NCBI RefSeq assembly: GCF_963853765.1
Contig: NC_088855.1
Span: forward strand, 39,184,001-39,248,000
Source of the DNA: Magallana gigas
Taxonomy: Eukaryota
DNA length: 64,000 nt
Reading direction: 5' to 3'
A program made the position numbers and the translations under genes. Shown here in pieces: positions 6,046-22,974 of this stretch. Each line of letters starts with the position of its first letter. The first letter of the stretch is position 1. The notes below the pieces were generated by a model. It did not search any database and was not told the origin of the DNA. It saw nothing but the letters and a program-made list of their open reading frames with translations.

Positions 6046-7357
6046 TTAATAACGCGTGTGACCACCATTTGCGTTCACGCATGCTTGACAGCGACGCCTT
6101 ATTGTTGCCACTAAAGTGTTTAGAAATGCTTGAGGGATGTTGTTCCAGATGTTGGTTAAAGCTTGGCCTAAATCAGCCAATGTCACTGGCTGATTTGGTA
6201 AACGGCGTAAACGTCTTTCCATTTCATCCCAGACGTGCTCGATCGGCGACAAATCGGGGGAAACAGCTGGCCAAGGCAAGACATCGACATTCTGTTGAAC
6301 AAACAAGTCCCTGACTACACGTGCAACGTGTGGCCTTGCGTTGTCTTGCTGCAGAGTGATGTGATTTTGATGTCTCTTTATGAAGGGTATCACATGACGC
6401 TGAATAATTTCATCTCGATAGCGTACGCCGGTGAGATTTCCATTGACAATTTGTAGAGGGGTCCTTCCACGTGCTGATATTCCACCCCACACCATAACGC
6501 TACCTCCACCAAATTGTCGACGTTGCACAACACAAGCGTCCTGGTAACGCTCCCAACGCGACGATACACCCTGCAACGGCGGTCACTGCTATCCAAATGA
6601 AATCTGGATTCATCAGTGAACAGAACATTGACCCAGTCCTGTATTCTGAATCGCAGATGTCGTGTGCACCACGCTAGGCTGCAGATACGATGACGTTGAA
6701 GCAGTACTGGGTGCACCGCTGGATGTCTTGGTCTGATGTTTTTTCTCGCGCAGACGATTATGCACAGTTCTTGGACTAATTGGTCGAAGCCCTGGGAATG
6801 CTACGGGCAGTCAAACTTGCTGTCTGGAAACGATTTCTCAGATGCACAAGTCTAATGTGGTTGTCCTGTTGACGTGGCGTCACACGACGTCGCCCAGAGC
6901 GCGGTCGATCCTGAATGTTGCCAGATTGTTGAAAACGTCTCCATAATGACTGGATGGTGTTCCGATGAACTCCAAAGTGTCTTGCTACAGTATTTTGTGC
7001 CATTCCAGCTTGCAGCATCCCAACAGCACGATTACGTTGGTTTTCGTTGAATCGTGGCATGACACAGAGGTAAATATTGTTGAAACTAAAGTGATTTCCT
7101 TAACAAAAAAAGTTTAAACAAATCCTTTACAGTTCTTATTCCTAACAGTATTGGCCCGTAAAACTCGTACGTACAAATTCTTCAATAAACAACAGGTGCT
7201 CACTGACCATGAAAAAGTCAGTGCACCCGGACGGTTACCATCCGATATTGTCAAAAACAATACCATTATCGATTGTTTAAATTTTATAAATACAAACAAT
7301 AGATATAGAAAAATTATACTAAATTTTATAATGCACAGTTTCTTTTTTACTCTAGTA
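6046..7357 (-). mobile_element. Tc1/mariner DNA transposon with a frameshifted DD34E transposase (pseudogene)
   Basis: Three ORF pieces (7060-6776, 6716-6390, 6576-6046) join into one transposase: N-terminal HTH MPRFNENQRNRAVGML, TDESRF, QQDNARPH, SPDLSPIE with 34 residues between D and E. Frameshifts near 6795 and 6555. TIR-like end gtttcttttttactctagta|ta near 7357; the other TIR was not found. Confidence 0.9.
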
Positions 7358-8430: not shown

Positions 8431-10978
8431 TTACAGTGTTGCTTTTAATTGATATATGTTTGGATTCCACGACTCATTATACAGGGATATATTTCCGGAA
8501 TAACCAACTTCTCTGTATACTTCCCTACAGTTTTTGTCAATTATGTGAAGATACATCGAAGTAATATTTTGCATCCATTTAAATGCGTTATACGTTGAGT
8601 TTCCTCTTCTAGTGCAGTATTCACATCGTACAATTGGCCCAGTAGTCAAACTGTCAACATATTCTTTTACTTTTATCGTAAACTGTGCACGTAAGAAATT
8701 GTATATACTCTTAGATACCTCTATTGGGTTCAATGCAAGATTTTCATACACAAGTCTCTGAATACGTCCTTGATATTTACCAGTTAACAATTTCACGTTA
8801 CGAATATCTTCTAACATCTTGCCACAAAAAAGTCGTGAAAAACTTTGAAAATGGTTTCTGTTAGATTGAGTAAGGTTACCGATTAGTTGTGAGTGAAGGA
8901 TTGCTCTCGAGTCTCGAACCAAGTGAATGACTTTGAGTGACGGCAGCCTTTTAAGCAAATAACCGACCGAAGCTGTATGCAAACGTATAGTTTTGTACGT
9001 CCTTGAATTAGCTTCAACACAAGCCTTTTGTAAAATTGATATGCATGGAGCTATAGTCATAGCTAGAGAGGAATCATTTGAACGATCTTGTCGGGTGCAG
9101 TTAAAATACAAATCGTGCTCCGGGGTGTAAATATGAATGAATTCATTGTACAAGCTGTTTAAGTCGATGTCCTGGAAGTTACAGGTGAACCAGTTCAGCA
9201 TCATTTCTGTCTTTAGTTTTTCAATGTCTGTATCATTATATGATAACCTGTACAGAAGGAAACAAGACACATAAAGGGATGGAAACCATTCGTTTCTTTT
9301 TATTAAAACATGTCTGGTATGTGTAGATTTGAAAAAAGGATAAAAAGATAGTATGGCCTCAAAGACACCTTCGGTTATTGCATTACAGGGAAAATCATCT
9401 CACTAACGGATGAATATAATTCTTCGCTGGATAGGAAATATCCTATTACATGTATATCCTGTCTCAAAGGAGTGGAATTAAAATTGTTTTTGAAAGATTA
9501 TCATAAAACAAGAGGCCAATGGGCCTTTCGCTCACCCGAGGAACACATGTATGATATAATCAGCTGGATGGAGTCATAATATAGCTATATGTATCTGGAC
9601 AATGTAGTATAAATCATGTAGATCCTGTTAAAATAAATATACATTTTTCACTCTTATGTTTTAATCAAGTCCTTTTTCTAACAGGATGGTTTTATAGTCA
9701 TATCAAATGTTGAGCATTGTAGTTCTAAAACGACTAAAATGACTAAACAATTGTTTGTTTATATATGTGATATAAACCTACATCAAGCTCTAAACCCCTT
9801 CTAAGGCCCAAGAATCATCCAGTGTTCACAGACTAAACAATTTAAATGAATCAGCTATATTTCAAATTGCTTGCATACGTGTAGGGGTAAATATATTCTA
9901 ACATTTCAGTTTTTGTGAATAAAAATGTTTTCCTTTGTAAACTTGGTTCCCCAATGTGGCCCCACCCTACTCCTCAAAATTTTGATTCCAACAAATTTGA
10001 ATTCACATCATCTGATGTTGCTTTCCCTAAGTTACAGCTTTTCTAGGCAAAAGGTTTTTTAGAAGAAAACTTTCTATCTATACTCCTATGTTAATTTTGC
10101 CCACCCCCCCCCCCCTCCACACACACACTGTGACTCGACCCTATCCTATCCCCGTGGATCATAATTTGATCAAACTTGAATTTACCCTACCAGTTGCTTT
10201 TACACAAGTTTAAGCTTTCCCGGTTGATTAAATTCTGAAAATGAAAAGAAGATTTTTAAAGATTTACTCAATATATTCTTATGTAAAATTTCGACCACCA
10301 TTGTGGCCCCACCTTACCCCTGGGGGTCATAGTTTTCACACATTTGAATCCACACAACATGAGAATGCTTCCACACAAGCTTCAGCTTTCCTATCTGATT
10401 ATTTTCTGAGTGGATTTTCAAAGATTTACTCAATATATTCCTATGTAAAATATTGACCCCCCATCGTGGCTCTGTCCTATCTGCGGGGTCATGGTTTTCA
10501 CAACTTTGAATCTACCCTACCTGAGGATGTTTTACTTAAGTTTAAGCTTTTCTGGTCGATTAGTTTCTAAGATGAAGATTTTTACTGTTTTTACTCCTAT
10601 CTTAAAAAAATGACTCAAATATCTAAAAATATTTCAATATTTCCTAAATATCTCCCCTGAAAAAAGGGTGTGGTCCCTAATTTTCACTACTTTGAATCCC
10701 TTTGGGGACAAAGGTTGCTTCGTGCCATGTTTGTTTGAAATTAACCCAGTATTTCTTGAGAAGACATTTTAAATTGGAAAGGTTTACGGACAGACGGACG
10801 GACAGACGACAACAAAATGTGACCAGAAAAGCTTACTTGAGCTTTCAGCTTGCTTTGTACCATGTTTTGTTGAAAGTAACCCAGTAGTTAATGAGAAGAT
10901 GTTGAAAATGGGAAAAGTTAACGGATACGCAGACAGACAGACAGAAGGAAGACAAACAAAATGTAATCAGAAAAGCTT

Positions 10979-11996: not shown

Positions 11997-12717
11997 GTTT
12001 TCTATAACGCAGCACCAACAAAACGTCTCCTCTACACCGACATGCGCGGTACATTTGATGTTATACATGTATTTAAGACGGGAAACCACGTATTATCCTT
12101 GTTTGCTAAATAGGAAATATCATATCACACGTATGTCCTGTCCAAAGGATAAGACTGATTCATATCATAGGAAAGGTCTTGTTTATTTCCCCACGACCGT
12201 TGATCGCCCCTTTTCTCTCAGGCGTCTGTAAAATCTAGTGTCATTATTTTTATTGCAGTACAAGATAATTTAAAAAAAACATTTTAAACAGAAACCTTTA
12301 TTCGAGCGAAGGTTCGAGAAGTAGTTAAACAATACTGAGCTCTATATATACTGAGGTATACGACGGGGAAAATATAAACTGTAAAATTTTATACGTTCTT
12401 TTTTTGCACATCTTTCCAATACGATACACGCTTAAAAACGTGTCCCATTACAAAATTATAAGAAATTAAACACAGTCCTGTAAGATTACAATCTAATTAA
12501 AATTAGAACTTCCATCCGCTCCCCGGTTTTCGATATGTCGCGTGGAAGATCTAACAACATTCCGTAAGAGGTCATGTTCTGGTGAACTCTGTATTAACCA
12601 ATCAAATCTCAGTAGACTTTCTTGTGTCCGGTAGAGACTGGTTCTCTGTCATTGCGTTCGGAAGTTTTCTCATTCTATGTATTTTAGTACATACCCGATG
12701 TGTTCCGAATTACAAAA

Positions 12718-15700
12718 ATGGCTGCATCAACACCTCGAAAAACGTGTGTTTTGTCAGACGTTTGCATTCTATGCGGATTTTCCTTCATTCAAATTGAAAA
12801 AACGGATGGTGGAGAGAAAATTCACAAGTTTTTTGATATTAAGTTAAAATTAAATAAGGAAAGAGTCGACAATGTAAAGAAGATTACCGGACTGCCAGAC
12901 ATTGATGTAGCAACGAATGCTGGCGTTTGCAAAAAATGTTACAGATCAGTAGAGTCTATTTTAAAGACGGAAGAAAAAAACCAGATAACCAAGCAGAGAT
13001 TCCGCGAAATTGCAGAAACCACAATGAAATCACACATGCTACAACTGCCCTCACCTAGGAGAAAATCCATAAGTAAACGAATGCTGAGAAGCCCGTCCAT
13101 GCCATCTTCAAAAAAGCAGACATTGGTGAACCTATCATATCGAAAGCTCGTGCAAATAGCGCCATTTAAGGACCTGACGAATACAACAGAATGGCAGAAA
13201 ACTGAGGTAAGTCTGCTGTCATACTGTTATGGGATGTAGGAAGTAATTCGAAATTCCTCTATATCAATTAACAGGTAGACATTCACTTTATTGTTTACAA
13301 TATGAAGATAATGAAGATTTTGCCGTTTTAATCTGACATTGGCGTCGGAAGCAAATTGAAAGTGAAGGGCTAGGCTTATCAGGAATGTTGACAAGCAAAA
13401 AAACTAAACAAAAAATAACCAGGAATATAGTTGTCCAAAATGCACCCCCTGTTCTGACGCCTATGTCTGAAAGAATTAACTGTATTGTCCATATATTAAA
13501 CTACCCGGTAAATACAGATACAGATGTATATCAACTGTGTTTTAATCAATAGGATTTGGTTATTTATCTACTCTATTTGAAGTTATACATGTATGACATG
13601 TATGATTAAAGATTTTATGATTTACTACATTATATTCACAGCTGTCTCTACCAGTCACCTGTCCACCGGAATTTAGTGCATCCACCAATATCCCTATTGC
13701 ACCAAAGGAGAAACAAGGTATGTTGGATTTGTTTTAAAAAATTGAAGTTATGAATGTATGAAATAATAAAATATGACCATATTTCACATGAAGTACTCGT
13801 TATATAATTTTAACTGAGTGATATGTTGTTGTTGTTGTAAGTACATGTAAACATGAAACACAAATAAATCATAAATTTAATTTGAATATACTGGCAGACA
13901 ATCAATTCTCACCAAGTACCAATTCTTGCCACCTCTTTTATTTTTGACGCAACAATTTACTGGCAGGAAATGGTACTTGGAGAGAATTGGTCGTTGGTGA
14001 GTAGCGATCTAAAATAAAATATTTGTTTTAAATAATTTTTATCTTGTATTATCAATTTATTCTGGATTTTTCTTCTTCATCGATGTTACATCTAGTTTGG
14101 AAATACAAGGGTTTAAGCGATCTTAAGATCTTAGTGACATTCATTCCACACTATTAGACGGATTGAGGTTAATTCAAAACATTTAGTAGTTGTTAAGTGT
14201 TGAAAATGTTATAATGCTAATTATGTATTTACTGCCCCAAATCATGATAGAAAATATTTTTATTGTATTGATAAATTTATGATGAATTGTAACAGAATCA
14301 GTTCCTAAATCCTCTAAGAGGGCCTTATTCTCAAGCGCACTAAAATCGGACCAGTGTTGTCTAGATGGGAAAGTTGAGGTGCAATGTTACAAATTTTTTT
14401 TTTTTTCAATTTCGTTTGTTTCGATTAGTCTTAGATTACACCTGTTTTATTTGAATGTTATGTAGAAATGTAGGGAACTTGTTAATTAACTGTGTTGAAC
14501 ATTCCTTTAACAGTATGTTTTGTGTACCGATATATACCATAAAATAAATACTTAAGGGTTCCAATGTCAATAAATGAATACACCCAGAAAGATAATCACT
14601 GCTCTTTTGAATATCTATGTAGGTAGTCGGTCATTTTCCACCTACTTCAAATTTATGTATCGGTATTCAATTCATTCATACAATTTTTTTTTTTATTTTA
14701 CAAAAGACTTCCAAAGTTGTTTTTAAAAGTTTTCCAATGACAGAAATCTTTGGAAAACTTTAAACTTAAACCTTCACTAGTAATCTCATTAAGATTTGTT
14801 GAGACTAAAAGATTTTGACGGATCGGTCAAAATTTTTCAGTCAAAATCTCTCTGAGATTACGGTATATTACTAGAGGAGACTATTGTAAAAAAAATTCTG
14901 ATTTATACATGTTTTATTTTCTATCTGACATTTGTCACACTGATTCAAATATTGTAAAAAAAAAAAAAATGTAAAATTCTTATTGCCAACAAACTACTTG
15001 TTGGTTTAAATATCAAATTTTATATTAAGCAGTCATGACTCAAATGTAAACATGTATAAATTTTCATTGTTCCTTATAGTCCTTAATTGATTTTTGTTTT
15101 ATTGAACTGTTAAATTATTTCTTTGTTTTTGTTTCTGATTTTGTTGTACAGGTTAAAATCAACATAATGACCAACCAATGTCTACCAGTATTAAATTTCC
15201 AACAAGTAACCTTGCCAATGCAAGTAACTGAATATTGTAATGTACTTTTGTCTAAATCAGCTTTTTAAGTATATAAAAGGACAAATGAATTGGCATTAGA
15301 AAAAATGAAGGAGCTTTAAGAAAATGTTAAATTATTTTGTGTAATGATGAACACTTACAACTGAGATACTCCAATGAAAATTTGATGCTGATATTAATGA
15401 TCAGTTTAAATTCAAAAATTCAAACAGTACTGACAAGTGTTGACCTTGTTAACTTTAGATTTTGATATTTGCGTTTATAGGTGTCCGTGTATTATGCCAG
15501 TGGAAAGAAGAGTGTTGAAATCACAAATGATGCACACAAAACTATATGTAAAGCATTCATCAGAGGAAAAGGTGTGGAAAAAATCATAGTTGATAGTATT
15601 TGCAAAGCAAATAAGTCAGCAGTAATTCATGGTGCAGGGCAAATTCTGAAGGAGGAGTCTCAAAGAACATGCAAGAGAGGAAATTCCCTGTTACAGAGAA

Positions 15701-18700
15701 AAGACTATCATAACTTCTTTGGCTTCCATTGGAAAGATATGTATGATGACTTGAGCAGAACCTGTCCTTCACTTCTTGAATTACTATCATCTGTTGTATG
15801 TGACATCCCGCCTGCACCTCCCAGTAAACCCTTTGTTCATATCATGTTAGCTGCTGCAGTGGCACTACATGGTAGAAATCAGGAGATGTCATTGATGCAT
15901 TACTTTACCGGGTTTATACTTACACATGGAGGTTGCACGCAACGGGTAAGTTATACATGTACATGTATATAATTTACTAAGTCTATTTTAAATTGCAGTT
16001 GTAATTGTGGTTTTCTGCCAACCATATCATTTTAAAATTGGTAATTTATATCTAGGATATACAAAGTATGCATCAGGTTTGTGCTGAACTAGCATAACAT
16101 TTTTAATTTGCAGGAGCCATGCTGTGCAAATTTTAATCTATATTTCTTTTTAATCTTCATAACAGGATATTGAGAGGTTGTCTAAAATTGGATTTAGTGT
16201 CCACCCACAAACCGTTCACAAGAAACTTATCAGCTGGCAAGACAATTTAGACATGGATTTGGTTTCTATTAGAGACTCATGGGCAGAAGGTGATCAGACG
16301 AAGTTCCAGATCATAGGCGATAACTGGGATAAGAATATACTACCATCTTATAGAACTTCAGATAGAAAAACCCTCTCGCTTCATCTCTTTAATATGTATG
16401 CCATTGTGGATCGGGTTGTACCAGCATCTTCAACAAACTCCCTGACAGAGAATAGACCAGAACTTGACAATCTGAAATTCATTCCATCAACTCAAGAACA
16501 GGAGCTTCTGTTAAAGGAAATGACCTTTCTATGTGCACGTTCTGTCATTGAAAACATACCACAGATTGGAAATTTGTTCCACAAAATATATCCTGATCAT
16601 CTTGAGCACAAATACAGTCGCTTTGCTGGTTTGAAGACCACTCAGGTGATTTAGATTGAATTATAAAGTAGTTAAAAGAAGGAGCAAATTAATATGTGCC
16701 AGCATTGTTTGTATGACCATCCCATCCCATAATATGTACCTACCGAAAGCTTATGAGCATAATCACGTCTCGGAAATTAGCTTAAACTAATAATTGGCCA
16801 TATTTTAGATTATAGATTGTTATATAAATATTGCTTATGATAAGTAAGTACCTCATTAATGTTTATAATCCAATATCATTCTTATAACTATATGTACATT
16901 GTATGCATTTTATTTTGCAGTATCCACTTGGATTGTATGACTGTAACGAAACAAAAACTGCTGATGTTGTCCAGTTGCTGAAGAAGCTAACAAACATGTA
17001 TGTGCCAATGAAAGATGATGAAATTGTTGAGCCAGTATTTTTTGGAGGTTTGTCTTTTATATTTTTTTTTTAATTTAATAGTTAACACCTCTACAAGTAG
17101 AAATATTTACACAATGTCACATCTTCAATACTATGAATATAAGCTTGTTTTCAAAGAAATGAAATTTAGAACCCATCCAACCCTGTATTCAAGCCTAAAA
17201 ACTGATATCAGATCTTGTTATGGGAGTATATCTATAGCTTATATCCTACTTAATATCATGTATATCTTACCTGTGAGAAATTAACATTAATGCAATCCAT
17301 CTATTTATGGATCTCAGGTACACTGATATATGAATCTCAGAATAGTGAAAATTCTTTCAGATGGTCCACAGTTGGCTACTGATTTATAAGTTGTATGCAT
17401 ATTGCATAATATCTTATTCATTTTCAGGAGACCGACTCACCGACGAACGAGTGCAGGGAGCTCAACAAGCAATGAGCAATGCAGGTTCTGCGAAAGAGAG
17501 GCTAGAGGGGTTTATTTCTAAGACAGAGGATTTCCACCGTCTCATGAATTTCTTAGAGGTACAATTTTTGCTATGGTTGAAGGCAATTTTTTCACATTAA
17601 AATTTTAAGAAATATTTGTGTATGGTTAGCTAAATCATTCTTAATTTTGATATTATTATACCATTGTTTCCAAAATTAATTACCAAGCATTCAATATTTA
17701 AATTGATATATTTAAATTTTAGGCAATACACAAGATGACATTCAGTACAGAAAGTGCAAGTGATCCTGGAACTGTTTATTATTATAGAAATGTCCTTAAC
17801 ATGAGAAATGTCAAAGGAAAAGTAAAGAATTCATATCGACCACACAAAATGTTATACTATACTGTTTTGGATGGTATAATCATGGCACTTTTCTATAATC
17901 ATTTTGGGTTAAAGGATTTTGAAAGCGATATTCCTGTACCAGAACATTTTCAGAATTTTACAGAGGAGCAGAAATTGCATTGGTTGAATGACATTTGTGA
18001 AGAAATTGTACAGAAGTGGTTTTTTGACAATGGCACAGATATTTGTCAATCCCTTAGAGAAGTACTATCAGATCCCAATCACCCTGAAAATTACTGGACT
18101 GAAAACATTTGTGAAGGTGGTCGGATTAAGTGTCACTTTTGTGAAAAGGATTATGCTTTTATAGGTTCATTAAAGTCGCATGAATCTAAAGTTCATAATT
18201 TCGTTGTTATGAAGGATAAAAAGCCAAAGAAAAAAAATGACTCGGATGAATTACAAGACTACATTTCTCTGCTGTTTAAGTTAACCTTGCTGCACAAAAA
18301 CCTTGACACTGCTGTAGATATGGGAGACGGTGAGCGTTCAGTACGTTCTACTAAGTATGAACTACCTATTTATAACAGAACAAGAAAAGTCAAGTATGTG
18401 ATTGGTTCTATTCATTTATCAGCTTTGACATCTGGAGTACTTGAAGAGGAGCAATGTGAGCGTTTGGTTGCTAATCGATTTGTCAATGTACAAGGAGGGC
18501 GAAACAATAACATAGCTTTGGATGAATACCTCGAGATATTAAACCGGGAAAGCAAAATAGCCTGTTCAGGACATCAGACTAAAAAAAGTATTATAGAGCA
18601 TTCAAAGGAATATCCGCATTTAGTTGGATTTGTGCAACATTTGGAGTCAATCAGCGATATGAACCCAAGGAAAGGATTTCATCACTTACCAAATTACCAT

Positions 18701-18895
18701 GATGATGTTAAAAAAGTTGCCTTAGATTTGGTGAAACATAATGTACTGTGTAACATTCCAAAACGTCAATTACAATGCAGATGCCTTGTTAATGACAAAA
18801 ACCCTTTTGAAAACTGTTACTCTGGACTTCCAGAAATGATTCATCGCCACAAGCCAAGCTTACCATACCGACGACTCCGAAGTCATCATATTTAG
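12718..18895 (+). CDS. AcademH transposase (DUF6589-like), 8 exons, ~1007 aa
   Basis: Exons 12718-13206, 13642-13717, 14296-14378, 15481-15945, 16166-16645, 16921-17047, 17428-17558 and 17723-18895 total 3024 nt with all phases compatible and no stop. Motifs IGDNWD, FGGDRLTDER, TEDFHRLMNF, NNIALDEYLEILNRESK. Small exons 2-3 are less certain. Confidence 0.82.
13337..13465. mobile_element. 129-bp mini-MITE with 5-bp TSD, in transposase intron 1
   Basis: tctga|cattggcgtcggaa ... ttctgacgcctatg|tctga; contains ttgacaagcaaaaaaa, shared with the G-tract MITE family. Confidence 0.7.
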
Positions 18896-18900
18896 CTTAA

Positions 18901-19242
18901 GGTACCTCACTACACCTTGAAGTAGTTTCTTAATTCACCAGAAAATTACTTGATTATGATAGATAGCATGATGGATAAGAAGTATATGTGTCAAATAGGC
19001 GAAAAAATGTGCAATTTTAGATAAAAAATGACATTTTCAAAAATTTCATTCAGTAAACATAAACAAAAGCCCCAGTCGGATTCGAGTTCATGACCTGCGG
19101 TTCACAAGCCTGATACTTTAACCACTGAGCTATTACGATATACATCTGAGTCAATTGATACAAACAGTTTAACGAAACATTTAAATCGCCATCTTGTGAC
19201 GTAGCGTCTTGAAAAGTACAAGTCTTGGTGTAGTGAAGTACC
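18901..19242. mobile_element. TTAA-flanked MITE (Kolobok-like) containing a tRNA-like segment, nested in AcademH
   Basis: ttaa|ggtacctcactacacc ... ggtgtagtgaagtacc|ttaa. Minus-strand 19137-19069 has an A box (tagctcagtgg) and a B-box-like ctcgaatcc. Confidence 0.8.
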
Positions 19243-19654
19243 TTAACATAATGATTGTACATTGTATTATTGTAGTACAGGAATTATCATCCATGTCATG
19301 TTAATATTGAACAGTCATCTAAAGTAAATAATGTCACAGTGAAAATTTTTCTGTGGATGTTTTTCAAGATTCTTGCCTTTAATTCACCCTCACTAAGGCT
19401 GTCCAAAGATAATTTTTTGTTGAACATCACCAACAAACATGAAGAAATTGCCATTTTGAAAAATAACTTATTATAAGTCCAACTTTAATCTTCCTTGTAC
19501 AGTAGGTAATGTATTTCGAAGGTGACAATAAATATAGAATTGACTTTGGACAGCCTAATTACTGTTTAAAAAGTTTGATATTTTAGCAAAAATCAATTTA
19601 AGTAATTTTTCTCGCATATAAATAAAAGCAGTAAAAAGTTCAATTTTTATTTGA

Positions 19655-21968
19655 TCAAGACAATTCTAAATTTTCATCATTGGAGAAGTACTCCTCTGTA
19701 TCACTGTCAGAAATATCACTGTCTTTCTGATTGACGCTTACCGATGAATGGTAATAGATTTCTTCCAGTGGAAGCATACTACAGTTCTGACACTTGCATT
19801 TAGTTTTACATAAATCACAACATGTGTGTTTCCTGCTTTCATTCTCTTTAAGCAATGCAATAGCTTCTGGCTTTAAAAAACACTGCATCAATGAAATTCT
19901 CCTACAGTCAGTTGATTTCAAAATTTCTTTCACATCTGATGAGAGTTTTCTAAGATGATAACAGTTATATAAAATAATAGCAACTGAAGGTCCTCCATCC
20001 CTGCCGACTCGTCCGATTTCTTGAAGCAGGTCAACAATTTGCACAGGTGGTCCAAATAATACGACACTGTGACAATTTTTCACATCCAATCCCATGCCCA
20101 ATGCGCTAGTGGCAATAACAATTTTGATTTCCCCTGTAATGTTTGTTAGACTTTCCAGGATTCTTTGTTTTTTGGTCTGTGGGGTTTCAGAATGAAACAT
20201 TTCCAGTAAAGTTGAAGTGAAAGGTAATTCCTTTGTAACATATGAATAAATTTCAGAGACATCCTTTATCGAGGTGCAATATATAATCGTTCTTGGAAAT
20301 TTTTCTTTGAGTTCACTCAGCCCCTCGATAAGCCAATGCATTGCTGTTTCTACAGTGTTTGATACTTTGGCTACTGATATTCTAATATTTGTTTTATTTG
20401 GAGAAATAACTATCTCTTTGAAATTGTCAGCTAAATGCAGTACCTTCATCACCCTCTTTCTAATCTTTATAGTGCACGTTGCACTGAGTGCCAACACTGA
20501 TGATCTTGGGTAAAGGGAGCGTAATTCTCCAACATCATTAAACCATTTACGAAATGTTTCCTTGCCTTGACTTTCACTATCGTCCCCCCTGTAAAAAAGA
20601 TTTCAACAAAACTTTGAAACCAGGTATATTTATCAATATATTGTGCAGTATGAAGATTAATCAAATACCAGTAATTAATGGTGCCAATGCTAATTTATAT
20701 GGAGGGACATTTCCATTAAGTAGATAATTTTTTTCTTAATTGATTTGGACTAACTGAAGAAATTTAATATGAACAATTATATATATAAACACTGGTATAA
20801 AATCTGTAGCTCAGCTTTTGAGATGTGAACATTTTTATCACTGATAATTTTGGTGTTTGCACATGCATTATTCCTGAATCCATATAGTTTTTGACAATGA
20901 CATGTTCCAGACAAATGAGTGACAAAAAAAATTATATTTTTTTTGTTTTTGTCATCAGTTATTCAGTATCTTCAGAGAACATAGTTCAGTATGGAACTTG
21001 ATAAATAATACCTGTATTTTTAATTAAACATACCATGTAGCAATTGTGTGGAATTCGTCTATGACAAGCACAGACACTGGCAAATTTTGGATGCTTGCCC
21101 TCCATTCTGGATCACCTACCAAGGTTTCTGGCGATGCATATATGATGTCCACTTTGCCTTCCTTTATTTCAATGTCACTCTGTGGACATGAACCTAACGG
21201 GAAAAGAAAATGCCATGGAATTTGATAAGTACAAATGAGTAAATATTACGAATTACAGTCAACTCGTAAACAAACTGACTTGTAAACAAATAGTCCGAGT
21301 GAAAAATTACCTTGTTATAATATTAGTCATGCTTTCAAAGAGTGAGAAGAATATTTAAACTTGGCCATATAATTAATCTTTTTGTTTAAAGATAAGATTG
21401 CATGGAAACAGAAATTTTCTATCAAATGTTGATATAGGGGCCTCTTTGGCAAACTTATAGGAGATGACACTAAATTGCCTAAAATTCTACATTCAGTTAT
21501 CTCACAATTTCTGAATTATTTGTAATCATATCAAAACTTAACCTTAACAGCTTTTCTTTTATATGTTTACAATCCAAGTATCATTGTTTTATATCAACGG
21601 TATTATTACCCATACATGTAGCAAGTGATTTTTGCAACATTATTGCTGAAAAAAAAAATAGAAAGGTAAATACCTGCGTAGGCTGATTTCACACCTGGAA
21701 TCTTTGACATTTTTTCTACTTGATCTTGCATTAAGGCCACAAGTGGACAGCACACGAGAACGATTTCTTTATCACTCGTCAGTCGTCGGTTTACCAAACT
21801 GTACATCTGATAAGGCAGGGACTTTCCATAGCCCGTGGGAAGAACTGCCATGCAGTCCGTTTTATTCATCAGACACTGTAGTATTGTTTTTTGTTCGTCC
21901 TTTAACGCATCGACTCCAAAAACTGGTAATAAATCGCAAACTAACGCTTCTATCGTGGACGCCGCCAT
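19655..21968 (-). CDS. AcademH RecQ-like superfamily 2 helicase, 3 exons, ~462 aa
   Basis: Exons 21968-21674, 21193-21034 and 20588-19655 total 1389 nt in frame. Motif I LPTGYGKS, Ia PLVALMQDQ, II IDEFH, III LSAT, V ATSALGMGLD, VI QEIGRVGRDG, C-terminal CRR...CCDLC Zn-binding. Confidence 0.9.
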
Positions 21969-22974
21969 CTTGTAAGCATAAACGAATCAAGCAAGAAAGA
22001 CGCTTTCTGATTGGGTGCTTGAAAAGGTTGATCCATATTTTGATTGGCTTGTTAAAAAATAAGATAATGTATTCATATTGAACTCTGACGTGACCCTTAA
22101 TGGGATGTTGTTAGATCTTCCACGCGACATATCGAAAACCGGGGAGCGGATGGAAGTTCTAATTTTAATTAGATTGGTAAGATTAGTAAAGAGCCACATT
22201 CCTTCGGATGTCTTAGCAGTTTGTATCTTAAAAGAATTTAAGGGGATTCTGTTCCTTAAAAAGAAAATATTTGTGTGTAAAGGGCAAATGTTGCCACTCC
22301 GTCCGGTAAAATTTTATTTTAAATTCCTGACTGCTACACCCACATATAGTATTAGGTTTTTTTCTCACAAGTATCATATAAACATTATGAAATGCATTTC
22401 TTGGCCCCTCGCCCAAAAAAGAATAAAAAGGCTATTAGATGAAAATCAATACCGTCAGACAAATAGGACAAACCGACCGTAATATTTTAAGATTATTTCA
22501 ACGAGACACATTGGATTTCAGGCCTTTGTCACATTTTTAAAAAGTCGTCGGATAAACTCAATTATAAATTTGTTTTACTACAGCAACTTCTCTTTCTTAA
22601 CATTACATTAAGTTTCCGGTCTTTTTAGTGACACAATACATGTATATATACATGTATCGGGTCTCATTCCTTTAATTGCAATATCTTACGATGAAAATCA
22701 ATTATTTAAATACTATTATAAATAATGTGTAACTTTAATCTGAATAAATTAAAAAAAAAAAAAACCTATGCTAAAGTCACTTTTATGTCCACTCCAACAG
22801 TAAGAAGATCAAATGAAAAATATCACTACAAGAATCAATATTAAAAAGTAGGGAGTGGGGGGTGGCCTTTCCCTGATGCTATGTGCCTAATGGTTAGGTC
22901 TAACTTTGCAAAAAAATGTGGAGCCCCCCCCCCCCCCCGGTTCCGATGTCTATGCCATGTATGACTATGCAGTT

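What the first reader, a model, noticed from the sequence alone, without database searches (positions are those of the whole stretch)
12489..22176. Apparently intact, recently mobile AcademH transposon with spliced transposase and RecQ-like helicase
Seen: perfect 72-bp TIRs, a perfect 9-bp TSD, and two multi-exon ORFs (~1007 and ~462 aa) with no stop or frameshift in my splice models. Its two nested MITEs both avoid coding sequence. Established: AcademH is a described helicase-encoding Academ lineage in animals and fungi; to my knowledge the role of the helicase and the transposition chemistry are not experimentally resolved. Inference: this copy is a candidate active element for such assays.
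Basis: partly seen in the sequence, partly recalled or inferred. Interest (0 to 1): 0.7.

Follow-up and report, generated by a model that had tools for sequence, protein, structure and literature searches.

The report
Young helicase-carrying oyster transposon, split transposase
This is a real, very recently moved copy of a known kind of jumping gene (AcademH, which carries its own RecQ-like helicase) in an oyster genome.

Summary
The structure is confirmed: a 9,688-bp element with 72-bp perfect inverted ends (89 bp at 93%) and a perfect 9-bp target duplication.

**Family.** The features fit AcademH. 13 insertions with perfect target duplications split 7 at 9 bp and 6 at 10 bp. The element has a DUF6589-type transposase gene and a convergent 462-aa RecQ-family helicase gene with intact motifs.

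- A 100% identical copy lies 91 kb away with different flanks and its own 9-bp duplication.
- A third copy on another chromosome shows purifying selection on both genes (pN/pS 0.11-0.16).
- About 90 short derivatives share the ends.
- The precise empty site, with a single GTAAGATTA, occurs in 4 of 4 other public runs.

**Splicing.** RNA contigs from three studies confirm it. However, the real transposase mRNA has eight exons and an in-frame TAA at codon 190, present in all three copies. It encodes a 189-aa N-terminal zinc-finger-like protein plus a separate ~805-aa catalytic frame. A stop-free 954-aa form would need both 76- and 68-nt mini-exons skipped, which was not seen.

**Verdict:** a new member of a known kind. 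The scan has already reported other AcademH elements in this genome. Academ membership of the transposase core could not be tested directly.

The parts
12480..12488 (.). Left copy of the 9-bp target-site duplication, GTAAGATTA
   Evidence: The empty-site allele with a single copy is seen.
12489..12577 (+). Left terminal inverted repeat, perfect for 72 bp (to 12560)
   Evidence: The terminal 31-mer occurs 182 times in the genome against 0 for the control.
12718..13206 (+). Transposase exon 1 (ATG at 12718). Encodes a conserved N-terminal Cys-rich, zinc-finger-like domain of 163 aa.
   Evidence: RNA joint 13206|13642. 137 homologues. Conserved C16-x2-C19 and C71-x2-C74.
13642..13717 (+). Transposase mini-exon 2 (76 nt)
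   Evidence: RNA joints in X15, X17 and X19. The peptide tail is conserved in Saccostrea and Ostrea homologues.
15152..15219 (+). Transposase mini-exon 3 (68 nt). Carries the in-frame TAA at 15154-15156, which ends ORF1 at 189 aa. The next in-frame ATG is at 15178. The donor is GC.
   Evidence: The 189-aa ORF equals P0342, which has 28 member sequences.
15481..15945 (+). Transposase exon 4
   Evidence: RNA joints. Homologue mapping.
16166..16645 (+). Transposase exon 5
16921..17047 (+). Transposase exon 6. Contains the GLYDCNE motif, a candidate first catalytic D.
17428..17558 (+). Transposase exon 7. DUF6589 region with the GGDRLT motif, a candidate second D.
17723..18895 (+). Transposase exon 8. 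Main DUF6589 block with the LDEYLEILNRESK motif. The stop codon TAG is at 18893-18895.
   Evidence: Pfam E 3e-18. 93 homologues, mostly bivalve. Nearly invariant D..E..N..K.
18897..19246 (.). Nested ~350-bp MITE with 16-20-nt inverted ends, flanked by a TTAA duplication. It starts 2 bp after the transposase stop codon.
   Evidence: (2,119 first-look candidates, 92-94% identity).
13889..14003 (.). Small fold-back repeat (43-nt arms) inside transposase intron 2. It is one of several old repeat fragments in introns 1-2.
19655..20588 (-). Helicase exon 3. Helicase_C domain, motif VI QEIGRVGR, stop codon TGA at 19655-19657.
21034..21193 (-). Helicase exon 2, with motif II DEFH
21674..21968 (-). Helicase exon 1 (ATG at 21968), with motif I GYGKS
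22088..22176 (-). Right terminal inverted repeat
22177..22185 (.). Right copy of the 9-bp target-site duplication, GTAAGATTA

Best explanation
The element is one of three full-length copies of a young, transcribed AcademH-type cut-and-paste DNA transposon family in an oyster genome.

Shown:
- Sharp ends and 9/10-bp target duplications.
- A convergent gene pair: a DUF6589 transposase on the + strand and a 462-aa RecQ-family helicase on the - strand.
- Real splicing of both genes.
- Purifying selection on both genes.
- Insertion so recent that a twin copy is identical and the site is still empty in other oysters.
- About 90 short derivatives carrying the same ends.

Inferred mechanism:
- The N-terminal Cys-rich domain recognises the inverted ends.
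- A DDE-type core, with candidate residues in GLYDCNE, GGDRLT and LDEYLE, cuts and joins DNA with a 9-10-bp stagger.
- The RecQ-like helicase assists, perhaps by unwinding ends or the target, or by helping gap repair that restores the donor copy.

In the assembled mRNA the transposase frame is split by a TAA at codon 190. The products seen are a 189-aa DNA-binding-type protein and, separately, a catalytic reading frame of about 805 aa. Either the two halves work as separate polypeptides, or a full-length 954-aa enzyme is made only when both mini-exons (144 nt together, in frame) are skipped.
For: Ends and duplication.

Three copies:
- B is 100% identical to A over 9,688 bp, lies 91 kb away in inverted orientation, and has its own duplication, AGAAAATTT.
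- C is on another chromosome with a 10-bp duplication, TTTAAATATT.

A versus C:
- Coding divergence is 0.63% against 1.67% non-coding (Fisher p 2e-6).
- pN/pS is 0.22 for ORF1, 0.14 for ORF2 and 0.11 for the helicase (combined p 2e-7).
- All indels are non-coding except one in-frame 9-bp deletion.

Empty site: contigs run from the left flank through a single GTAAGATTA straight into the right flank in X15, X17, X19 and X11, which come from four studies.

Derivatives: 182 matching ends in the genome against 0 in the control. MITEs of 101-210 bp carry 5 perfect 9-bp and 5 perfect 10-bp duplications.

Splicing:
- Seven transposase joints are each seen in two or three RNA runs.
- The helicase model matches the spliced protein P0097.

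Stop codon and ORF1. ORF1 equals P0342.

Helicase family: NCBIfam recQ_fam hits are collinear over the three exons, the best PDB matches are WRN, RecQ and RECQ1, and motifs I, II, III and VI are intact.

Literature: AcademH makes 9-10-bp duplications and encodes a helicase, while AcademX makes 3-4-bp duplications and encodes a nuclease (PMC10045372). Academ elements are amplified in bivalves (PMC10294476).
Against: - No Repbase or Dfam Academ sequence was available, so the transposase core is tied to Academ only indirectly, through DUF6589, the duplication length, the helicase and the taxon range.
- The DDE fold was not shown. The AlphaFold model of homologue P0055 was poor in the core (pLDDT 58) and Foldseek found nothing.
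- The assembled mRNA has a premature stop, and no exon-skipped isoform was seen. Production of an active full-length transposase is therefore unproven.
- All RNA evidence comes from assembled contigs, which drop rare isoforms and show neither strand nor level.
- The transcripts in those runs differ from copy A at a few bases, so they come from other copies or alleles of the family.
Confidence: 0.75

Rival explanations
1. The family moved recently, but these copies are no longer autonomous. The TAA at codon 190 truncates the transposase, and the recent movements, including those of the MITEs, were driven in trans by another source or by a now-lost intact copy.
For: The stop is in all three copies and in RNA contigs from three runs. 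No skipped isoform was seen. The genome holds at least eight other AcademH-like lineages with intact last exons.
Against: - The other lineages are only 49-62% identical in the transposase and were not found to share these ends. The only long matches to this element's ends are the three copies themselves.
- Both halves of the transposase and the helicase show pN/pS of 0.11-0.22 since A and C split, with the stop already present in both. Selection has therefore acted on the split arrangement.
- Short N-terminal homologues ending just after the same mini-exon are annotated in Saccostrea and Ostrea.
Confidence: 0.17
2. It is not an Academ element. It belongs to another superfamily that makes 9-10-bp duplications, such as MuDR/MULE, and has captured a RecQ-like helicase. 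A Kolobok-type helicase carrier is another possibility.
For: MuDR also makes 9-10-bp duplications and has long inverted ends (established knowledge). KolobokH and Kolobok-1_CCri carry RecQ helicases (PMC9587614). Academ membership of DUF6589 was not directly tested.
Against: - No exon hits the MULE, hAT, P or other transposase Pfam families at E <= 0.1. DUF6589 is the only hit.
- Kolobok makes 4-bp TTAA duplications (established knowledge); KolobokH is fungal only.
- DUF6589 is common in molluscs and cnidarians and is reported as enriched in rust fungi. Academ is reported as most abundant in rust fungi (Pucciniomycotina) among fungi and as amplified in bivalves.
Confidence: 0.06
3. The identical twin copy reflects a segmental duplication, gene conversion or an assembly artefact rather than transposition.
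For: The two copies are only 91 kb apart on one assembled chromosome and are 100% identical.
Against: The flanks are unrelated and each copy has its own perfect 9-bp duplication. The empty site at A exists in independent runs. The copies are in inverted orientation.
Confidence: 0.02

Closest known systems
AcademH lineage of the Academ superfamily (Kojima 2020, Mob DNA 11:15; features as cited in PMC10045372)
   Same: Terminal inverted repeats, 9- or 10-bp target duplications, and a transposase plus a separately encoded SF2/RecQ-like helicase. It occurs in animals, and bivalves are rich in Academ.
   Different: Nothing tested conflicts. I cannot say whether this exact family is already in Repbase. 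The split transposase frame (189-aa ORF1 plus ~805-aa ORF2) in the assembled mRNA is not something I can attribute to the published description, because that paper was not available to me.
AcademX (Academ elements with an XPG nuclease)
   Same: Presumably the same transposase superfamily.
   Different: AcademX makes 3-4-bp duplications and encodes a nuclease. This element makes 9-10-bp duplications, has a helicase, and shows no XPG hit in any exon.
KolobokH / Kolobok-1_CCri (Kolobok elements carrying a RecQ helicase)
   Same: A DDE transposon that carries a RecQ-type helicase. In Kolobok-1_CCri the helicase is on the opposite strand.
   Different: A different transposase family. Kolobok makes TTAA 4-bp duplications, and KolobokH is fungal (PMC9587614).
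P element IVS3 control and En/Spm TnpA/TnpD (one transposon transcription unit giving a DNA-binding product and a catalytic product by alternative splicing)
   Same: This is a resemblance in how it may work only. An mRNA form yields a truncated N-terminal DNA-binding-type protein, and an in-frame alternative would give the full enzyme.
   Different: The superfamilies are unrelated. No alternative isoform, tissue specificity or repressor activity has been shown here.

Membership tests
AcademH | Target-site duplications of 9 or 10 bp | tested here: met
   Three full-length copies give 9, 9 and 10 bp. Ten MITEs with perfect duplications give 5 at 9 bp and 5 at 10 bp. The rule is quoted in PMC10045372.
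AcademH | The element encodes a helicase in addition to the transposase | tested here: met
   A 462-aa spliced ORF on the - strand carries DEAD and Helicase_C domains. RecQ family hits are collinear over its three exons, and motifs I, II, III and VI are intact.
AcademH | Transposase core belongs to the Academ DDE clade (Yuan and Wessler 2011; Repbase) | not testable with these tools
   No Academ reference protein or profile was available. The only Pfam hit is DUF6589. The taxon range of DUF6589 parallels that reported for Academ. K-mer look-ups in a curated bivalve Academ library found nothing, and the held part of that library has no entries from this species.
AcademH | Terminal inverted repeats bounding the element | tested here: met
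   72 bp perfect, 89 bp at 93%.
AcademX | XPG nuclease domain and 3-4-bp duplications | tested here: not met
   No XPG hit in any exon. Duplications are 9-10 bp.
Kolobok (KolobokH) | TTAA 4-bp duplication and a Kolobok transposase | tested here: not met
   Duplications are 9-10 bp with no TTAA preference.
MuDR/MULE | MULE-type transposase domain (Pfam MULE / Transposase_mut) | tested here: not met
   No such hit at E <= 0.1 in any exon. The duplication length alone would be compatible.
RecQ helicase family (the accessory protein) | RecQ-type helicase core; canonical RecQ proteins also have a RecQ C-terminal zinc-binding and winged-helix region | tested here: inconclusive
   The core matches recQ_fam profile positions 6-332 of 470. 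The best PDB relatives are WRN, RecQ and RECQ1. No Pfam RecQ_Zn_bind hit was found. Per-exon scores sum to about 191 bits, below the 219.8-bit family cut-off. The joined protein was not scored.

The most novel reading that the evidence does not exclude
The two short exons (76 + 68 nt, together in frame) may act as a conserved 'poison cassette'. When included, as in all bulk RNA contigs seen, the mRNA yields only a 189-aa end-binding protein that could repress transposition. When skipped, perhaps in germline or embryo, it yields the full 954-aa transposase. Alternatively, AcademH transposase may naturally work as two polypeptides, a DNA binder plus a catalytic subunit, together with the helicase. 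Either way this would be the first insight into how an Academ element is regulated.
Probability: 0.3. Interest if true: 0.65.

Novelty: new member of a known kind. Interest (0 to 1): 0.5.

Why it matters
To my knowledge no Academ element has been studied experimentally, and the role of the helicase is unknown. This family offers an unusually complete natural kit for such work:
- Two identical, very young full-length copies, plus a third kept by selection.
- RNA-defined exon structures for both genes.
- A precise empty site for genotyping.
- Natural ~110-bp MITE substrates carrying the same ends.

The report also corrects the gene model. Anyone cloning 'the transposase' from the predicted 1007-aa model would not be using what the RNA shows. 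The in-frame stop raises a concrete, testable question about splicing control or a two-part enzyme.

Tried and rejected
- **Kojima 2020 (AcademH paper):** not held, by DOI or PMC id. Its features are taken from citing papers.
- **Pfam-to-TE tables** of PMC10799480: no DUF6589 or Academ entry.
- **Curated bivalve TE library** of PMC10294476: no match to this element's ends or to four coding 20-mers, and no entries from this species in the held part of the DDE library.
- **AlphaFold2** on homologue P0055 with 39 sequences: the core was unmodelled (mean pLDDT 58) and Foldseek against PDB gave nothing below E 0.5. The DDE fold is therefore not shown.
- **Earlier AcademH finding (s1-375636):** I fetched the place computed for it. 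That stretch has no homologue of any exon, so my coordinate reading was wrong.
- **'MAAST' at both protein starts:** I considered that this reflects an extended inverted repeat. The alignment shows it does not.
- **Stop-free splice models from sequence alone:** rejected as evidence, because 588 such GT-AG models exist.
- **Joined proteins:** the joined (spliced) proteins were never sent to a search or folding tool. All searches were done exon by exon by reference. Joined frames were only checked for stops and substitutions inside scripts.
Full report
**Observation.** The element occupies window 12489-22176 (9,688 bp, no N).
- Its ends are inverted repeats, perfect for 72 bp and recognisable to 89 bp at 93%.
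- GTAAGATTA stands directly outside both ends, at 12480-12488 and 22177-22185.
- The window is G000:C3:39184001-39248000 of a 564-Mb genome.

**Copies in the genome.** A search with the left end found three full-length copies.
- Copy B (C3:39288163-39297850, opposite orientation, 91 kb away and outside the window) is identical to the window copy at all 9,688 positions. It has unrelated flanks and its own 9-bp duplication, AGAAAATTT.
- Copy C (C5:2908565-2918270, 9,706 bp) has a 10-bp duplication, TTTAAATATT. It differs by 116 substitutions and about 25 indels.
- The terminal 31-mer, allowing up to 3 mismatches, occurs 182 times in the genome against 0 for the reversed control. Only six of these ends belong to the full-length copies.
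- The rest are mostly 101-210-bp elements made of the two ends back to back. Of 20 examined, 10 have perfect duplications, 5 of 9 bp and 5 of 10 bp. The others have decayed duplications.

**Genes.** I searched exon by exon.
- On the + strand, Pfam finds only DUF6589 (E 3e-18 for the last exon). On the - strand it finds DEAD and Helicase_C.
- No exon hits MULE, hAT, P, XPG or other transposase or nuclease families.
- The helicase model has exons 21968-21674, 21193-21034 and 20588-19655.
- This helicase model matches P0097, a 315-aa protein from a 952-nt public contig that joins all three exons and stands for 62 sequences. Spliced helicase RNA therefore exists.
- The three helicase exons match NCBIfam recQ_fam collinearly, at profile positions 6-73, 96-140 and 144-332. 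The best solved relatives are WRN, bacterial RecQ and RECQ1.
- Helicase motifs I (GYGKS), II (DEFH), III (SAT) and VI (QEIGRVGR) are intact.

**Transposase transcript.** I laid contigs of three RNA runs from three studies, plus one DNA run, on 12400-18399.
- All three RNA runs show the same joints, apart from a 1-nt variant of the first joint in X19. The DNA run shows none of them.
- The exons are 12718(ATG)-13206, 13642-13717, 15152-15219, 15481-15945, 16166-16645, 16921-17047, 17428-17558 and 17723-18895. Six introns are GT-AG and one is GC-AG (15220-15480).
- One 3,912-nt contig (X17) carries the whole chain.
- Joined in a script, this makes 3,009 nt in frame, but with a TAA at 15154-15156, which is codon 190 at the start of the 68-nt third exon.
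- The stop is present in copies A, B and C. No alternative letter is reported there in any run.
- The resulting 189-aa ORF equals P0342 (189 aa, 99% identical, 28 member sequences).
- After the stop the same frame stays open for 812 codons. The first ATG is at codon 198 (15178), and it reads GTG in two of the runs.
- Skipping both mini-exons (76 + 68 = 144 nt) would give a stop-free 954-aa protein. No such joint was seen, although contigs cannot exclude rare isoforms.

**N-terminal protein.** Exon 1 encodes a conserved Cys-rich module with C16-x2-C19 and C71-x2-C74.
- It has 137 relatives in the representative library.
- Most relatives are short proteins. A few are fused to DUF6589 (P0245), to BTB (P0253) or to C2H2 fingers (P0277, P0341).
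- RefSeq models in Saccostrea and Ostrea are 178-210 aa. Two of them contain a homologue of mini-exon 2 (IPIAP[KQ]EKQ) and end within 13 codons after it.
- This suggests that the short N-terminal product is a conserved feature rather than a defect of this copy. That is an inference.

**Selection.** I compared copies A and C.
- Coding sites differ at 0.63% and non-coding sites at 1.67% (p 2e-6).
- pN/pS is 0.22 for ORF1, 0.14 for ORF2 and 0.11 for the helicase (combined p 2e-7).
- Every indel lies outside coding sequence except one in-frame 9-bp deletion in helicase exon 1.
- All splice sites are kept in C.

**Recent mobility.**
- *Identical twin.* Zero differences over 9,688 bp between A and B, each with its own duplication, indicates a very recent transposition, apparently a local hop with a gain in copy number. 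As an inference, if the mutation rate is 1e-9 to 1e-8 per site per generation, the 95% upper bound is roughly 1.5e4 to 1.5e5 generations.
- *Empty site.* In all four laid runs, from four studies, a contig runs from the left flank through a single GTAAGATTA directly into the sequence that follows the right duplication in the window, from 22186 onward (table 7). This is the precise empty site, without a footprint, so it is most simply the ancestral allele. Insertion A is therefore not fixed.
- *Limit.* I could not tell whether those individuals also carry the filled site.
- *Source of the transcripts.* The transcripts in those runs differ from copy A at a few bases, so they derive from other alleles or copies of the family.

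**Nested repeats.**
- A ~350-bp MITE with inverted ends and a TTAA duplication lies at 18897-19246, two bases after the transposase stop codon. Its family has more than 2,000 first-look candidates in the genome at 92-94% identity.
- Introns 1 and 2 hold several older repeat fragments, for example a fold-back at 13889-14003.
- All are shared by the three copies. They therefore belong to the family's structure and say nothing about the age of this copy. None touches an exon.

**Comparison with what is known.**
- PMC10045372 states that AcademH makes 9- or 10-bp duplications and encodes a helicase, while AcademX makes 3- or 4-bp duplications and encodes a nuclease.
- PMC10294476 reports Academ as amplified in bivalves.
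- PMC5751038 notes that in 2017 the Academ core matched no Pfam family, and that Academ is most abundant in rust fungi. A 2025 preprint reports DUF6589 as enriched in rust fungi.
- These points tie DUF6589 to Academ only circumstantially. I had no Academ reference sequence, so that membership criterion remains untested.
- Kolobok helicase carriers are excluded by the duplication length. MULE is excluded by the lack of its transposase domain.
- The DDE chemistry is inferred from conserved acidic motifs: GLYDCNE, GGDRLT and LDEYLEILNRESK, the last with a nearly invariant D..E..N..K in 39 homologues. The structure model was too poor to confirm the fold.

**Context and limits.**
- The genome holds at least eight other AcademH-like lineages with an intact last exon.
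- The scan has already reported intact, broken, domesticated and non-autonomous AcademH elements elsewhere in this genome. The kind is therefore known.
- What this locus adds is direct evidence of very recent movement and an RNA-based gene model with a split transposase frame.
- Read laying and the look-up of sequencing runs were limited to one call each.
- The joined spliced proteins were not sent to any search or folding tool.

Noticed in passing
G000:C2:14906482-14907639, C3:34751481-34752638, C8:15456553-15457710 (outside the window): Three loci have identical scores (58% identity to this transposase's last exon, open frames of 405 aa). They look like another AcademH-like family with very similar, possibly recently moved, copies. 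At least eight such lineages keep an intact last exon in this genome.
   Followed up: no
Proteins P0253, P0277, P0341, P0248: The N-terminal Cys-rich domain of this transposase also occurs at the start of long proteins with a BTB domain or C2H2 zinc fingers, and in a 1,028-aa protein without any Pfam hit. These may be host genes that recruited the transposon's DNA-binding module.
   Followed up: partly
window 18897-19246: The nested TTAA-flanked MITE contains a stretch that looks like a reverse-complemented tRNA T-arm/acceptor region. Its family has more than 2,000 first-look candidates in the genome.
   Followed up: partly
window 18399 to about 19794 (inferred): The 3,912-nt RNA contig of run X17 continues about 1.4 kb beyond 18399. 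If collinear, it runs through the nested MITE into the 3' end of the convergent helicase gene. The two transcripts may overlap tail to tail, or the assembler may have merged them.
   Followed up: no
window 8431-9270 (-) and 6046-6576 (-): A sulfotransferase-like exon lies about 3 kb upstream of the element, and a Tc1/mariner-type DDE_3 fragment lies further upstream. Empty-site contigs occur in RNA libraries, so the insertion site may lie in a transcribed region.
   Followed up: no
G000:C1:5995042-5995531 and C1:10228067-10228639: Single loci match parts of transposase introns 1-2 at 85% and 78%. They may be remnants of a diverged relative of this family.
   Followed up: no
window 15178: The first in-frame ATG after the internal stop reads GTG in one RNA run (X17) and in the DNA run (X11). 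The start of a separate ORF2, if one is used, is therefore not conserved in the population.
   Followed up: no
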